In this document: one piece after another, positions 14,920 to 62,744 of the stretch
Position numbering within the stretch: position 1 is the first letter of the stretch
Layout of the letters: each line of letters starts with the position of its first letter
DNA from: Octopus bimaculoides
Taxonomy: Eukaryota
Assembly (NCBI RefSeq): GCF_001194135.2
Contig: NC_069003.1
Span: 370,061 to 434,060 of the forward strand
Direction: 5' to 3'
Length of the DNA stretch: 64,000 nucleotides
Notes under the pieces: generated by a model
Told to the model about the DNA's origin: nothing
The model's database searches: none
The model's input: the letters and a program-made list of their open reading frames with translations, nothing else
Position numbers and translations under genes: made by a program

Positions 14920-15830
14920 AGCAGTTTTCCCTACCAGAAGTAGAGAAGAAATTTCAGGTGTGGAAGCAAGGTTTAGAATCGAAGGGCCTTAGAGCCAATG
15001 TTGCAAAGACCACAATTCTAGTAAGTAGGAAGGCAAACACATCACACACCCCTTCAGGTAGGTGGCCCTGCTTGATCTGTAGAAAAGGTGTGGGTAGAAA
15101 CTCCATAGGATGTACTCAGTGTAAGCTATGGGCACATAAGAGGTGCAACAACATCAAAGGAAGATTAACTCGGACGATAGCTTTCATGTGTGACAGATAC
15201 ACTGCGGCAATAAACACCACAGATGCTCAGAAAACCGATTCCATCACATGCCAGGGGAAGAAACTAGAAGTAGTTGATAGCTTCCGCGACCTAGGTGACC
15301 AAGTCTGTAGTGGGGGGGGGGATGCTCAGAGAATGTTACCGCTAGAATAAGAATAGCCTGGGCAAAGTTCAGAAAGCTCCTACCCCCACTGGTAACAAAG
15401 GCCTCTCTCTCAGAGTGAAAGGTAGATTGTTTGATGCATGTGTGCGAACTGCCATACTTCACAGTAGTGAAATATGAGCTGTAACTACTGAAGACATGCG
15501 TAGGCTTGAAAGAAATGAAGCTAGCATGATCCGCTGGATGTATAATGTCAATGTGCACACATGACAGAGTGTGAGCGCCCCAAGAGAAATGTTGGACATA
15601 AGAAGCATCAGATGTGACGTGCATTGGTATGGTCATGTACTACGGATGGATGAGGAAAGCAGTGTGAAGAGGTGCCACTCCCAAACAGTGGAAGGAATCC
15701 GGGGTAGGAGGAGACCCAGGAAGATATGGGATGAGGTGGTGAAGCATGACCTTTGAACGTTGGGCCTCACAGAGGCAATGACAAAAGACCAAGACCTCTG
15801 GAGATATGCTGTGACTGAGAAGACCCAACA
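14881..15830 (+). mobile_element. 5'-truncated RTE-clade LINE ORF2 (RT from YADD, PHD-like insertion, C-terminal domain), pseudogenised
   Basis: PWELLYADDL..WKQGLESKGLRANVAKT..CLIC..CTQCKLWAHKRC..DSFRDLGDQV..ARIRIAWAKFR..HWYGHVLRMDEE..GRRRPRKIWDEVVKHDL..DLWRYAVTEK; several frameshifts and stops. Confidence 0.95.
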
Positions 15831-29746: not shown

Positions 29747-29803
29747 CGTGTGGCTGTGTGGTAAGAAGCTTGCTTCCCAACCACATGGTTTTGGGTTCAG
29801 TCT
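29747..29803 (+). mobile_element. Isolated head of CORE-type SINE
   Basis: cgtgtggctgtgtggtaagaagcttgcttcccaaccacatggttttgggttcagtc, truncated at the B box. Confidence 0.75.
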
Positions 29804-29804
29804 C

Positions 29805-29940
29805 TGTAGCCTGTAACATATCTCATGATTGACCTTATCAAAAGCTTTTGCAGAGTCAAGATATATCATATCCCCATATCAGCAAAAGCTGTGTAAGGCA
29901 GCTTCTTCTTGGATAGAAACGATGCTGGGTCACAGGAACA
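29805..29940 (-). mobile_element. CR1/Jockey-group RT fragment
   Basis: Minus strand SCLTQLL followed (frameshift) by IYLDSAKAFDKVNHEI. Confidence 0.75.
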
Positions 29941-33008: not shown

Positions 33009-33625
33009 TGTATCTTGTTTCATAAGAAGGACTTTTGACAATTTCTATTATTAATACCAGCAGCCTACCCTGAGTTTTCCCTCATATCACATGCTTGATG
33101 ACAGGTCCAACACAAATTATCAGGAGTTATAATCTTTTATCATCTCATCTATATAACATAAGTAAAAAAACATAAAATGGCTTTATGGCAAGGGACACAA
33201 GGACTTTTGACATTCTATATCCAATAATTTATCTGGTTATCATATACACATTGTAGCTATCATGTAACCAGTTATCTGCATACAACTATTATCTCTCTGC
33301 AGTGAACATTGTTCAAAGCCATCTTTAGCTGCTCATAGACCTGATTCTTTATCAAAGAAGTGGGCATCCACACCATTAAAATATGATGATACTATACCAT
33401 TTATGAGCCACTTGGATCTTTATGCTACAACACCCATAACACATACCTTAAGAAAGCACTACCTCTGTGTCACTATATCTATAAAACAATGTTACTCTAT
33501 AAAACAACAATAATATATTTATAGGACAAAAAAAAACCCCAAAAGACAATTGAACTATCCAATCAAACTTTTAAAAAATCAAACAAAATATTCACCAGAA
33601 CAAAACCTTTAAAATTCAATCCTAC

Positions 33626-33698
33626 CTGTCTCCTGTTGAAATATTGCAAAATTCATTCTGAAACTTACCTGCAAGGAAAATAGAAAATATATGTTAAT
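33626..33698 (-). other. Candidate recursive splice site RS-B with 43-nt cryptic exon
   Basis: Minus strand ttaacatatattttctattttccttgcag|GTAAGTTT (junction 33669|33668); second donor ACAG|GTAGGA after 33626. Confidence 0.7.
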
Positions 33699-33854
33699 TA
33701 ATAAATTCACTTTTACACATGATTAGCATTTTGTTACATTTAACAATAAAGACATATTTTTTTTCTCATATCTTTTTTATCAACAAATATGATTCACTGA
33801 GAAATATACCTGTTTTGAATTATGAAGGTGTATTCAACTTTAGCACAGACTCAC

Positions 33855-33891
<37 letters not shown>

Positions 33892-34044
33892 AAGAAAGAA
33901 AAAAACCATACAAATATGTACTGTTGAATCATAGTTTTATTTATATATGGAGTATGGATACATAAATAATTTTATGTATGTATAATTATTTGTATACTGA
34001 TAGATATGAATAATTAGAACTGCCTGTGTGTGTGTGTGTGTGTG

Positions 34045-40790: not shown

Positions 40791-41217
40791 AAAGTACCAA
40801 CAATAGCAACTACATGATACTGTAAGTAAGAAACTTATTTTTCTACACAGGCATTTGTGTGTCTTCAGTGAATCCTCCCATAAAACCTGAGAGACCTACA
40901 TGGGGTGGACCCCTGTTGTGAGTTCAGATGAACCTACCTCGCAGCAAGAAATGCAGATGAGGACAGCAACAGCAAACTCCCTCGTTTATGAAATGTCACA
41001 CGTCAGAGGTGGTTTCGTCTAGTGAAAATGGAGCAAAGCTAATGGTGGTGCCCCAGCGTGGCCAAAATTATCTACTACCTCTAATGAGCCACCAGGGTAT
41101 TTGAAAAGAACAATTTTCTGTGTCTCTAAAGTTTTTATGGATTCTGTGCACTTTTCACATATGAAAACTAGATATATAGATATATCTATATGTTTATATA
41201 TCTACATACACACATAC

Positions 41218-41259
<42 letters not shown>

Positions 41260-41267
41260 TGCTTGGT

Positions 41268-41409
41268 GCTTGGTGTTAGGAAGGGCATCCAGCTGTAAAA
41301 ACTTTGCTAAAAAAGACAGTGAAGCCTGGTGCAGTCTTCTGCCTAGCCAGATCCTGTCAAACTATCCAACCCATACCAGCATGGAAAACAGATGTATGAT
41401 GATGATGAT
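41268..41409 (+). mobile_element. RTE 3' end fragment
   Basis: ggtgttaggaagggcatccagctgtaaaa..ccaacccataccagcatggaaaacagatgtatgatgatg. Confidence 0.8.
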
Positions 41410-51236: not shown

Positions 51237-51565
51237 CATCATCATCATCGTTTAGCGTCCGCTTTCCATGCTAGCATGGCTTGGACGATTTGACTGAGGA
51301 CTGGTGAAACCAGATGGCTACACCAGGCTCCAATCTGATTTGGCAGAGTTTCTACAGCTGGATGCCTTTCCTTATGCCAACCACTCCGAGAGTGTAGTGG
51401 GTGCTTTTACGTGCCACCGGCACGAGGCCAGTCAGGCGGTACTCGCAACGGCCACGCTCAAAATGGTGTATCTTACGTGCCACCTACACAGGAGCCAGTC
51501 CAGCGGCACTGGCAACGATCTCGCTCAAATGTCTTTACACATGCCAGGCTTGCCCCAAAAGGTCT
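51237..51565 (-). mobile_element. Young 5'-truncated RTE 3' end
   Basis: Colinear with 5142-5877, CpG-rich, complete cgtccgctttccatgctagcatgg / catcatc tail. Confidence 0.85.
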
Positions 51566-51594
51566 TTGCAAGCCAAGTTTCGTGTCCAACGAAG

Positions 51595-51743
51595 GAGACA
51601 ATGGCCATGCTGGAGCACCGTCTTTAATCAAACAAATCGACCCCAAGACTTATTCTTTTTAAGGCTAGTACTTATTCTATCGCCCTCTTTTTGCCAAACC
51701 ACTAAGTTATGGGGACATAAATACACCAGCATCGGTTATCAAG
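51595..51743 (-). mobile_element. 3' part of CORE-type SINE
   Basis: ggccatgctggagcaccgtctttaatcaaacaaatcgacccc..ctaagttatggggacataaatacaccagcatcgg. Confidence 0.8.
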
Positions 51744-52230
51744 TAAGAGTCCCTTGTAGCGTGGGGAATTTATGTTTTGTAATGCCCTTAATATAATGTG
51801 TGTGTGTGTGTGTGTGCGTGTGTGGTGCAAAAAATATAGATAAGATGAAGACAAGCTAAAAAACAACAGCATATTAGATATACCCTCAGGAATTAGGAAA
51901 AATTAGAAGGAAGTGTCTCTCACACTTTGAACATATGCTTTTCTTATGAAAGAATAGACAAGGAAAAGTAAATGGTGAAACAGAAGAACACATGTGCGTC
52001 TATAAAACTGCTACAATATACTGAAGTGACTGGAAGTGATAAAGAGATCGCAAGAGAATTTTCCAACTCCAGTCAGAAGCAGAACAGTTGTAGTGTAGCC
52101 CCCATATCTTTCTATTTCTTTTAACTTTTTATAATCAGAAAAATCTGTGAAACCAGTTAAGCCTTTAAAAATAAACCATCTAAAAGATTCCCAGTGCATT
52201 TTCAACATATTTTTTCTACCCACACTCTCT

Positions 52231-53272: not shown

Positions 53273-54216
53273 GTGCATGTGTGTGTATTTTTTGCCTCAA
53301 TAACATTGCTGTTGAAATAATCATACACATGAGAAAATTTCTGCTTTTCCAGAATAAACTCGATTGAAAGCTGGCTTTTTTTAAATATGTAAAATGAAAC
53401 AGCAAGAAATTTGTTATTTGTAATTAAAACACTTTTTTCCCACTAATCATAAATATTTCAAATTCTTTAATAGAGATAAATTAAATTCAGCTGTAGAAAA
53501 AAAAATGCCTTCTATAGAAAAAAAAGTCCTCTATAGGAAAGAAAAATCTTCAGGGGATCCATTTGTAAACACACAAAAGACCAAGTGTAATTGCAGCACT
53601 AGTTTGTGACAAAGCAAAACTTAAAGATGAATAGAGAATACATCTTTATGAAATAGAATTAACATAAAATTCTAATATTAAGTGAACATCAATTATTACC
53701 TTATAGGGAAACGAATGTGAAGGTGAGATAACTGAATGAATGAAATGTTCAAGTTAATTGCCTTTGTTTATCTTGTAGTGGGGAATAAGTACTTGACCAC
53801 ATGATGGAAACAACAGCAGCCCTTGAGAAATATATTCCATTTATTAGGCCACATTCATTAATATATATATGATATAGTCCATTGGTAAACCAGATAAGAG
53901 ATATTTTCCATTAATACACATTTGAAGATGAAACATTCAGTAGGTTTTCCAATGACTGATTGAGGGGTAGGGTTACATTTATTCCTCAAAATATTTGATT
54001 TCATCTTTGCTCTATTGCATCATTGCACACTAGGTTTTTGGTTTCTGTTGTAATATTTCTGGCAATAATATCCATTAATTCTCTTTCAAGTCTTTCCTTC
54101 AATGAATGTTAAATTCAATTCCTTTTTTTTTCCGTAGTAACATAAGGCATTGTCTGAAAGAGGTGTTAACTGCTTCAAAGGAACAGAAAAGTACATTGAA
54201 AATATAACAAATTTAC

Positions 54217-54297
54217 CTACATACTGTTTTAAATGACAGGAATATTTTCTTGTTGAGAAACTTACCTGCAAATAAAAGAAGAAGAAAAAGAACGTAA
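54217..54297 (-). other. Candidate recursive splice site RS-A with 41-nt (or 49-nt) cryptic exon
   Basis: Minus strand cttacgttctttttcttcttcttttatttgcag|GTAAGTTT (junction 54266|54265); downstream donors ACA|GTATGT after 54225 and TAG|GTAAAT after 54217. Confidence 0.7.
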
Positions 54298-61789: not shown

Positions 61790-62285
61790 GCAGGGCACCT
61801 ATTTCTGCCTCTCTATTTCTCTGTCGCACTCTAAACCTTCATCATCAGATACTGGGTCACCTTCTCCAATGTTCCTTCCGTTATAGCGAGACACCTATTT
61901 CTGCCTCTCTGTCCCCCTCCAACCTTTCATCCTCTCACACAAATTCTCCTCCTCTAATGTCCCTGCCTCTCTCATAATTCCTTGTCTTGTGAATTACTTG
62001 GTGACCCTGTAAAAAGCATCCAGTCGACACTGTAAAGTGGTTGGCATTTGGAGGGGCATCCAATCGTAAGAATCATGCCAAGACTAACATTGCCTGTGCT
62101 AGTGCCATGTAAAAAGCACTGGGTCCACTCTGCAGAGTGGTTGGTGTGAGGAAGGGCATCGAGCTGTAAAAAAACCTTCCAAAATAGACACAGTAGTGTA
62201 GGGTAGTTTTCTACCTGGCTGGTTCCTCTCAACCATCCTACCCATGCATGCATGGAATATGGATGGTAAACGATAATGATATATA
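61790..62285 (+). mobile_element. RTE-related 3' element with duplicated modules and gat tail
   Basis: Colinear with 26455-26890; two gtaaaaagca..ctgtaaagtgg/ctgcagagtgg..gggcatc modules; ends gatggtaaacgataatgat. Confidence 0.7.
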
Positions 62286-62744
62286 TATAGATATGGATAA
62301 ACACACATTTTTATAACATCTGTTAGCCTGGCCATCCTAGTAATATACACCAACACAGATATACAAACTCTTGCATACAACTATGAAGTTCTCTCATACA
62401 ATTACAAATATGCATGTGTGTGTGTGTGTGTGTGCGTGTGTGTGTGTGTGTGTGCATGCTGTAAGTGTTTGAGAGTATGTTAATCACATTTCCTCAATGC
62501 AGTGATGATGACAATAGCTTAAAAACATCAACACCATAATGATGACAATAACACAAAGCCCGTCTCATTGTAGGAGCAATAATAATAGATGATGACGGTG
62601 ATGAGAATGATGATGATGATGGCATAATAGTAAGGATGATGATGATCTTAACAGTTATAATGACAGCGATGATATCATTGGTGTAATCAATTCTAAGGGA
62701 AAGGAAAAAAATCTGAATCTGCAATGAATGAAATACACACACAC

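What the first reader, a model, noticed from the sequence alone, without database searches (positions are those of the whole stretch)
33626..33698. Ratchet point RS-B with 43-nt cryptic exon
Seen: ttaAc at -26, tract ttttctattttcctt, GCAG|GTAAGTTT, and CAG|GTAGGA exactly 43 nt downstream. It lies in repeat-free AT-rich sequence roughly midway between the other two sites, as expected if the sites divide the intron into similar segments (inference).
Basis: partly seen in the sequence, partly recalled or inferred. Interest (0 to 1): 0.7.

Follow-up and report, generated by a model that had tools for sequence, protein, structure and literature searches.

The report
Recursive splice site in octopus intron
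The flagged motif is a real splice acceptor fused to a perfect splice donor, inside a very long intron of an octopus gene; RNA data show it being used, which makes it a likely 'recursive' splice site of the kind known from flies and vertebrates but not reported from cephalopods in the papers I could search.

Summary
It reads ttaAc (A at -26), a 15-nt pyrimidine tract, GCAG|GTAAGTTT (cut 33669|33668), then CAG|GTAGGA 43 nt downstream.

Two more sites have the same build and strand, at 54265 and 7922. They are not copies of a repeat. The composite motif occurs 3 times against about 0.003 expected.

RNA supports use of RS-B:
- A cDNA contig (run X11) joins an upstream exon that is absent from the window (...GAAGACTTCAAG) exactly to 33668. 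It then reads more than 600 nt into the downstream intron, which is a ratchet-junction intermediate.
- Two raw RNA-seq reads from another study stop at the same acceptor. One covers exactly the 43-nt exon.

RS-A shows an equivalent junction in three libraries, but to a different upstream exon. It is therefore not shown that the sites share one intron. RS-C has almost no RNA support.

Re-splicing from the regenerated GTAAGT was not observed directly. Conservation in two related species is suggestive only (P about 0.07).

Homologues of a transposon fragment in the window place it in an octopus genome. I found no paper on recursive splicing in cephalopods or molluscs.

Verdict: a probable new member of a known kind.

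The parts
33693..33697 (-). Candidate branch point ttaAc, with the A at 33694 (-26 from the cut)
   Evidence: Read directly from the sequence. It fits yUnAy. Not tested experimentally, and no lariat reads were available.
33669..33687 (-). RS-B polypyrimidine tract (33687-33673) followed by the acceptor GCAG (AG at 33670-33669)
   Evidence: pyrimidine fraction 0.8 over -23 to -4. The acceptor is used in RNA: the X11 contig and the X24 and X32 reads all end here.
33663..33668 (-). Regenerated donor GTAAGT. After ligation to the upstream exon it reads AAG|GTAAGT, a 9/9 match to consensus.
   Evidence: Its use as a donor is inferred and was not observed.
33626..33668 (-). 43-nt cryptic RS-exon. 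Its length is not a multiple of 3, and frame 1 holds TAA and TGA stop codons.
   Evidence: One search gives the length and frames. In one search, one X32 RNA read fits exactly 33626-33668 and carries over 100 further letters that do not fit the stretch. One X24 read fits 33639-33670.
33620..33625 (-). Weaker donor of the RS-exon, CAG|GTAGGA (7/9 match)
   Evidence: The X32 read ends exactly at 33626. The X11 intermediate contig reads straight through this donor unspliced.
54211..54290 (-). RS-A: pyrimidine tract, GCAG|GTAAGTTT (first intron G at 54265), a 49-nt RS-exon (54265-54217) and donor TAG|GTAAAT
   Evidence: Junction contigs in X11, X15 and X16 join ...CCCGAGGAAG(AG) to 54265. An X32 read pair ends at the same place; one of its reads runs 86 nt past the RS-exon donor.
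7875..7947 (-). RS-C: pyrimidine tract, TCCAG|GTAAGTTT (first intron G at 7922), a 42-nt RS-exon (7922-7881) and donor CAG|GTAAGG
   Evidence: RNA support is minimal: about 19 nt of a single X31 read falls in the bin 7870-7916. An X16 contig crosses the site unspliced.

Best explanation
RS-B is a recursive splice site (ratchet point) with a short cryptic RS-exon. It lies in a very long intron of a minus-strand gene in an octopus genome.

Proposed mechanism:
1. The spliceosome defines the 43-nt RS-exon (33668-33626) through its strong acceptor (branch point ttaAc, a 15-nt pyrimidine tract, CAG) and its modest donor (CAG|GTAGGA).
2. The upstream exon, which ends ...GAAGACTTCAAG and lies outside the window, is ligated to 33668. 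The upstream part of the intron is thereby removed.
3. The new junction reads AAG|GTAAGT, a perfect U1 site. It outcompetes the weaker donor 43 nt downstream.
4. A second splicing reaction from 33668 removes the RS-exon together with the next intron segment, leaving no trace in the mRNA.
5. Occasional use of the weaker donor includes the frame-shifting 43-nt exon.

Shown here: the motif and its rarity, use of the acceptor, the intermediate with the downstream intron still attached, and rare inclusion of the 43-nt exon.

Inferred: re-splicing at the regenerated donor, donor competition, and the role in orderly removal of a long intron.
For: Motif and statistics.

The three sites share only the tract and CAGGTAAGTTT, so they are not repeat copies.

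All three have a donor 42-49 nt downstream. The chance of that at one random position is 0.056, or 1.8e-4 for three. In each case that donor is weaker (7-8/9) than the regenerated one (9/9).

RNA at RS-B:
- A 711-nt X11 contig runs continuously from 33012 to 33670, then carries 26 letters of an exon that is absent from the window.
- An X24 read stops at 33670 and an X32 read covers exactly 33626-33668.

RNA at RS-A: the same kind of junction appears in X11, X15 and X16, and in an X32 read pair.

The P4 libraries are cDNA, because SMART-type adaptor letters flank one contig.

Intron RNA is present 25 kb further downstream (8040-8780). There is no AATAAA or ATTAAA within 1.5 kb downstream of RS-B, where 2.2 would be expected.

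In two related species the core 33573-33702 is identical, while the flanks carry 10 changes in 227 nt.

The architecture matches published descriptions: an RS-exon of about 50 nt, out of frame, with the ratchet-point donor stronger than the RS-exon donor (PMC8605326). Ratchet junction reads are treated there as direct evidence (PMC6110457).
Against: - The second step was never observed. There are no lariat reads, no product joining RS-B to a downstream exon, and no reliable saw-tooth profile. The cDNA libraries are peaky amplified molecules, so depth does not measure abundance.
- The RS-B junction contig is in one library only. X15, X16 and X13 show only unspliced RNA across the site.
- Each raw-read observation is a single read.
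- RS-A and RS-B are joined to different upstream exons. The simple chain exon -> RS-A -> RS-B is therefore not demonstrated.
- Conservation is not significant: P is about 0.07 for the core defined in advance and 0.12 after correcting for scanning.
- The host gene and its annotated exons are unknown.
Confidence: 0.72

Rival explanations
1. It is an ordinary alternative cassette or 'poison' micro-exon of 43 nt. The GTAAGT at its start is incidental, and the exon is either included or skipped in one step without re-splicing.
For: The 43-nt exon is seen in polyA-type RNA-seq: one read fits exactly 33626-33668. Intermediates in which the upstream intron is removed first also occur for normal exons.
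Against: Three independent sites on one strand all begin with a perfect GTAAGTTT directly after a strong acceptor, against about 0.003 expected. Lengths of 43 and 49 nt break the reading frame. Inclusion looks rare, at 1-2 reads per roughly 12 million reads sampled per run. At RS-A no inclusion branch breaks the contigs.
Confidence: 0.17
2. The acceptor at 33669 opens an alternative or cryptic last exon. The X11 contig would then be a terminal exon rather than an intermediate.
For: The X11 contig continues for more than 650 nt past the acceptor without splicing. Cryptic last exons in long introns are described in the literature (PMC7997972, listed).
Against: There is no AATAAA or ATTAAA within 1.5 kb downstream, where 2.2 would be expected. 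A read ends exactly at the 43-nt exon's donor. The same libraries hold RNA up to 25 kb further downstream. The contig stops at a microsatellite, not at a poly(A) tail.
Confidence: 0.05
3. It is a chance motif or a technical artefact, such as reverse-transcriptase template switching or a chimeric assembly.
For: Only single reads and single contigs support the RS-B junction. Three libraries show only unspliced RNA.
Against: The junction falls exactly at AG|GT in three runs from two studies and by two methods, raw reads and contigs. RS-A shows the same behaviour in four runs. The motif statistics argue against chance.
Confidence: 0.04

Closest known systems
Drosophila intronic ratchet points with cryptic RS-exons (Burnette 2005; Duff 2015; Joseph 2018; Joseph et al. 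2021, PMC8605326; Pai et al. 2018, PMC6110457)
   Same: Long pyrimidine tract, then CAG|GTAAGT. A cryptic out-of-frame RS-exon of about 50 nt (here 42-49 nt) with a weaker downstream donor. Several sites tens of kb apart on one strand. Junction reads from an upstream exon to the site.
   Different: A different phylum (a mollusc, Lophotrochozoa). The cryptic exon is detectably included at a low level, whereas fly intronic RS-exons are described as almost never seen in mRNA. Saw-tooth, lariat and mutational evidence are lacking here. All three sites carry an extra TTT after GTAAGT.
Vertebrate RS-sites and RS-exons in long neuronal genes, e.g. zebrafish cadm2a and human CADM1/2, ROBO2 (Sibley et al. 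2015, as summarised in PMC5126111; Blazquez et al. 2018, PMC6224609)
   Same: The RS-exon definition model. There is competition between the regenerated donor and the RS-exon donor. Low-level inclusion gives a frame-disrupting exon. The choice of upstream exon may matter.
   Different: This is not a vertebrate locus. My initial zebrafish cadm2a hypothesis found no support. The motif here is a full consensus CAG|GTAAGT; vertebrate sites are described as not carrying the Drosophila consensus (PMC5126111).
Ubx m1/m2 expressed recursive micro-exons (Hatton et al. 1998, as described in PMC8605326)
   Same: A short exon that starts with a donor and can be either included or removed by re-splicing.
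   Different: The Ubx micro-exons are 51 nt, frame-preserving and functionally expressed. The 43-nt exon here breaks the frame and is rare.

Membership tests
Recursive splice site / ratchet point with RS-exon | A splice acceptor directly abutting a splice donor: (Y)n N YAG|GTRAGT | tested here: met
   ttttctattttccttgcag|gtaagt at 33687-33663. It is a perfect 9/9 donor once joined to an exon ending in AG.
Recursive splice site / ratchet point with RS-exon | Ratchet junction reads: an upstream exon joined to the intronic site | tested here: met
   The X11 contig joins an exon tag absent from the window to 33668. The X24 and X32 reads stop at the same acceptor.
Recursive splice site / ratchet point with RS-exon | A short cryptic RS-exon bounded by a downstream donor that is weaker than the regenerated one | tested here: met
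   The exon is 43 nt. CAG|GTAGGA scores 7/9 against 9/9 for the regenerated donor. The exon boundaries are seen in an X32 read. Donor strength was judged by consensus match, not by MaxEnt.
Recursive splice site / ratchet point with RS-exon | Lies inside a long intron of a transcribed gene | tested here: inconclusive
   The partner exon is absent from the assembled window; if it lies upstream, as assumed, it is more than 30 kb from RS-B. It could instead sit in an assembly gap. Unspliced RNA covers both flanks and distant parts of the window. The gene model and the intron ends were not found.
Recursive splice site / ratchet point with RS-exon | Re-splicing from the regenerated donor (lariat with its 5' end at the site, or a scar-free product) | not tested
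Recursive splice site / ratchet point with RS-exon | Saw-tooth intron coverage in total or nascent RNA | tested here: inconclusive
   In X11, depth is 46.7 just downstream of RS-B and 0 just upstream. X15 and X16 show high-depth unspliced molecules across the site. Adaptor-flanked contigs show that depth reflects amplification.
Recursive splice site / ratchet point with RS-exon | Conservation of the acceptor|donor core above the flanking intron | tested here: inconclusive
   33573-33702 is identical in organism B, and 33607-33702 in organism C; the flanks carry 10 changes in 227 nt. P is about 0.07, or 0.12 after scan correction. Word-level checks for RS-A and RS-C were uninformative.
Conventional cassette micro-exon | Frame-preserving length and appreciable inclusion in mRNA | tested here: not met
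   43 nt is not a multiple of 3. Only 1-2 reads appear in three runs of about 12 million sampled reads each.
Alternative / cryptic last exon | A poly(A) signal and a cleavage site downstream of the acceptor | tested here: not met
   No AATAAA or ATTAAA within 1.5 kb. RNA continues 25 kb downstream. No 3'-end data were available.

The most novel reading that the evidence does not exclude
These would be the first documented recursive splice sites in a lophotrochozoan. On this reading, octopus long introns use a fly-like ratchet-point grammar (strong tract, CAG|GTAAGTTT, and an RS-exon of about 45 nt). RS-exon-based recursion would then be either ancestral to bilaterians or repeatedly recruited wherever introns grow long. 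Different upstream exons may also feed different sites (E_a to RS-A, E_b to RS-B).
Probability: 0.45. Interest if true: 0.7.

Novelty: new member of a known kind. Interest (0 to 1): 0.58.

Why it matters
Recursive splicing has been established mainly in Drosophila and vertebrates. How general it is among animals with long introns is an open question. Cephalopods have large genomes with very long introns. A site with RNA support there extends the mechanism to a third major animal lineage. It also gives a concrete locus of three sites in 46 kb for testing whether recursion aids long-intron removal or acts as a quality-control switch. In addition, it shows that a strict sequence grammar alone can find such sites in an unannotated genome.

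Tried and rejected
1. Zebrafish cadm2a, the known vertebrate RS gene. I recalled it from the literature (PMC5126111). A search with a DANA repeat sequence written from memory found nothing. Homologues of a transposon ORF are all from Octopus bimaculoides.
2. Repeat origin of the three sites. An alignment shows only the tract and CAGGTAAGTTT in common.
3. Known RNA families. There are no Rfam matches in the window.
4. Finding the upstream exons in the window. There is no match of 11 nt or more to either exon tag. The flanks of the assembly gaps look like microsatellites and tell nothing.
5. Identifying the host gene from open reading frames on the minus strand. I saw nothing exon-like by eye. 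An exact-protein look-up found nothing.
6. Saw-tooth from contig depth. Abandoned once adaptor-flanked, peaky contigs showed that depth reflects amplification.
7. Conservation of RS-A and RS-C from shared 31-letter words. There are too few words to be informative.
9. Sibley 2015 and Duff 2015 are not held in the paper library.

Full report
**Observation**

The feature lies on the minus strand. Read 5' to 3', it is ...ttaattaacatatattttctattttccttgcag|gtaagtttcagaatgaattttgcaatatttcaacaggagacag|gtaggattg.
- The cut falls between 33669 and 33668.
- The A of ttaAc is at -26 (33694).
- The pyrimidine tract spans -19 to -5.
- Exactly 43 nt (33668-33626) precede a second donor, GTAGGA.

**Is it more than chance?**

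CAGGTAAGT occurs three times in the 64-kb window, all on the minus strand, against 0.45 expected. I scored all 372 AG|GT positions on both strands. Only three combine a pyrimidine tract of at least 0.8, a Y at -3 and a perfect AG|GTAAGT. Their first intron G is at 54265 (RS-A), 33668 (RS-B) and 7922 (RS-C). Relaxed thresholds add no further minus-strand site.

Each site has a donor-like sequence 49, 43 or 42 nt downstream: TAG|GTAAAT, CAG|GTAGGA and CAG|GTAAGG. A random position has such a donor at +35 to +60 with probability 0.056, so three out of three gives about 1.8e-4. In first-order Markov simulations the full composite motif appears 0.003 times per window, against 3 observed.

The three sites are not copies of a repeat. 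Their alignment shares only the T-rich tract and CAGGTAAGTTT.

**Where the window comes from**

The window is a gapped draft assembly, very rich in microsatellites, with about 35% GC. My first guess was zebrafish cadm2a, the vertebrate gene in which recursive sites were blocked in vivo (PMC5126111). That guess found no support. A zebrafish repeat sequence written from memory matched nothing. All named homologues of a retrotransposon ORF at 14958-15350 are Octopus bimaculoides proteins at 64-81% identity.

The window is therefore from an octopus, probably that species. This is an inference, because run and organism names are coded.

**RNA evidence at RS-B**

In three deep raw-read RNA runs, each about 6% sampled, two reads touch the region, and both lie only on the 43-nt exon.
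- One read (X32) fits exactly 33626-33668.
- The other (X24) fits 33639-33670.
- Both carry 20 or more further letters that do not fit the stretch, so they are spliced reads.

A 711-nt contig from run X11 fits 33012-33670 without interruption. It then carries 26 letters (plus strand: TGAAGTCTTCAAAGTCCATCCAGTAT) that occur nowhere in the window. In transcript orientation this is ATACTGGATGGACTTTGAAGACTTCA(AG)|GTAAGTTTCAG... The contig is thus an upstream exon ligated exactly at the predicted acceptor. The RNA continues through the 43-nt exon's own donor and more than 600 nt into the downstream intron. That is the expected recursive intermediate. It is also the kind of 'ratchet junction' that the field treats as direct evidence (PMC6110457).

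The study this run belongs to is cDNA, because one of its contigs is flanked by SMART-type adaptor letters (recognising the adaptor rests on my own knowledge).

**Limits of that evidence**

Three other libraries (X15, X16, X13) show only unspliced RNA across RS-B. The adaptor-flanked, very uneven contigs mean that depth reflects amplification, not abundance. An apparent step in X11, from depth 0 upstream to 46.7 downstream, therefore cannot be read as a saw-tooth. Each raw-read observation is a single read.

**The sister sites**

At RS-A, three libraries each hold a 58-nt junction contig. It joins GACTCGGTTAATACAACACCCGAGGAAG(AG) to 54265, at higher depth than the unspliced branch. A read pair from the other study ends at the same point; one of its reads runs 86 nt past the 49-nt exon's donor. 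RS-A is therefore used in the same way.

The exon tag at RS-A differs from the one at RS-B, and neither is in the window. There are two possible explanations:
- They are alternative upstream exons.
- The RS-B partner exon lies in an assembly gap between the two sites. The gap flanks look like microsatellites and do not decide this.

RS-C has almost no RNA support. About 19 nt of one read fall in the bin 7870-7916, and one contig crosses the site unspliced.

**Conservation**

A contig from a related species (organism B) spans 33448-33804 with 10 substitutions or indels. None falls in 33573-33702. An RNA contig from a third species (organism C) is likewise identical over 33607-33702.

This fits selective constraint on the core, but at about 4% divergence it is weak. 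P is about 0.07 for the core defined in advance, and 0.12 after allowing for scanning.

**Rival explanations**

- An ordinary poison micro-exon would explain the inclusion read. It would not explain three perfect GTAAGTTT donors placed directly after strong acceptors.
- An alternative last exon is unlikely. There is no AATAAA or ATTAAA within 1.5 kb downstream. A read ends exactly at the 43-nt exon's donor. RNA from the same libraries is found 25 kb further downstream.
- An artefact is unlikely, because the junction falls exactly at AG|GT in two studies and two data types.

**Mechanism and comparison with known systems**

The architecture matches the published RS-exon model:
- an acceptor-donor pair;
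- a cryptic exon of about 50 nt, usually out of frame;
- a regenerated donor stronger than the exon's own donor, so the exon is normally removed by a second splicing reaction (PMC8605326; PMC6224609 abstract).

Here the regenerated site is AAG|GTAAGT (9/9) against CAG|GTAGGA (7/9). The exon is 43 nt, and one of its three frames (frame 1) carries stop codons.

The second reaction itself was not observed. It remains the key inference.

**Novelty**

Full-text searches of the held library found no paper that combines recursive splicing with octopus. The only hits for cephalopod or mollusc were incidental; the cephalopod one sits in a reference list. I therefore rate this a new member of a known kind. 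It is a likely recursive splice site in a cephalopod, with a fly-like consensus.

Noticed in passing
window 54211-54290 (minus strand): RS-A has the same build as RS-B. Junction contigs in three cDNA libraries and one raw read pair support it. Its upstream exon tag (...CCCGAGGAAGAG) differs from the one joined to RS-B (...GAAGACTTCAAG).
   Followed up: yes
window 7875-7947 (minus strand): RS-C has the best pyrimidine tract (1.0) and the strongest downstream donor (GTAAGG, 8/9), but almost no RNA support. The run index says X11 holds 7 of 7 sampled words of 7860-7970, yet no X11 contig was laid there. This is unexplained.
   Followed up: partly
window 14958-15350 (+), also about 29800-29869 (-): Fragments of a non-LTR retrotransposon. 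The first is a PHD-finger and reverse-transcriptase tail whose named homologues are all from Octopus bimaculoides. The second is an RT-like 'YLDSAKAFDKVNHE' fragment.
   Followed up: partly
window 5600-5960, 51400-51800, 61970-62310, 41200-41360: A dispersed SINE-like repeat. Its spurious ORFs share strings such as 'LQLDALPNANHS' and 'ALATISL'. It occurs in several copies and orientations.
   Followed up: no
window 33856-33905: A run of about 50 A on the plus strand, which is a T50 run on the transcript. It lies 190-240 nt upstream of the RS-B acceptor.
   Followed up: no
window 7541-7728: Short stretches carry very high RNA depth (up to about 630 in X19). Every read fits only partly and has varied loose ends, and T>C at 7564 is seen in all 35 reads that cover it. 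This looks like an expressed repeat or microsatellite flank from elsewhere in the genome, not an exon of this locus.
   Followed up: partly
whole window: There are nine runs of N totalling 2,542 nt, and 111 tandem-repeat rows, mostly TA, CA and GA dinucleotides. T exceeds A on the minus strand by about 5%, which is consistent with minus being the transcribed sense strand.
   Followed up: partly
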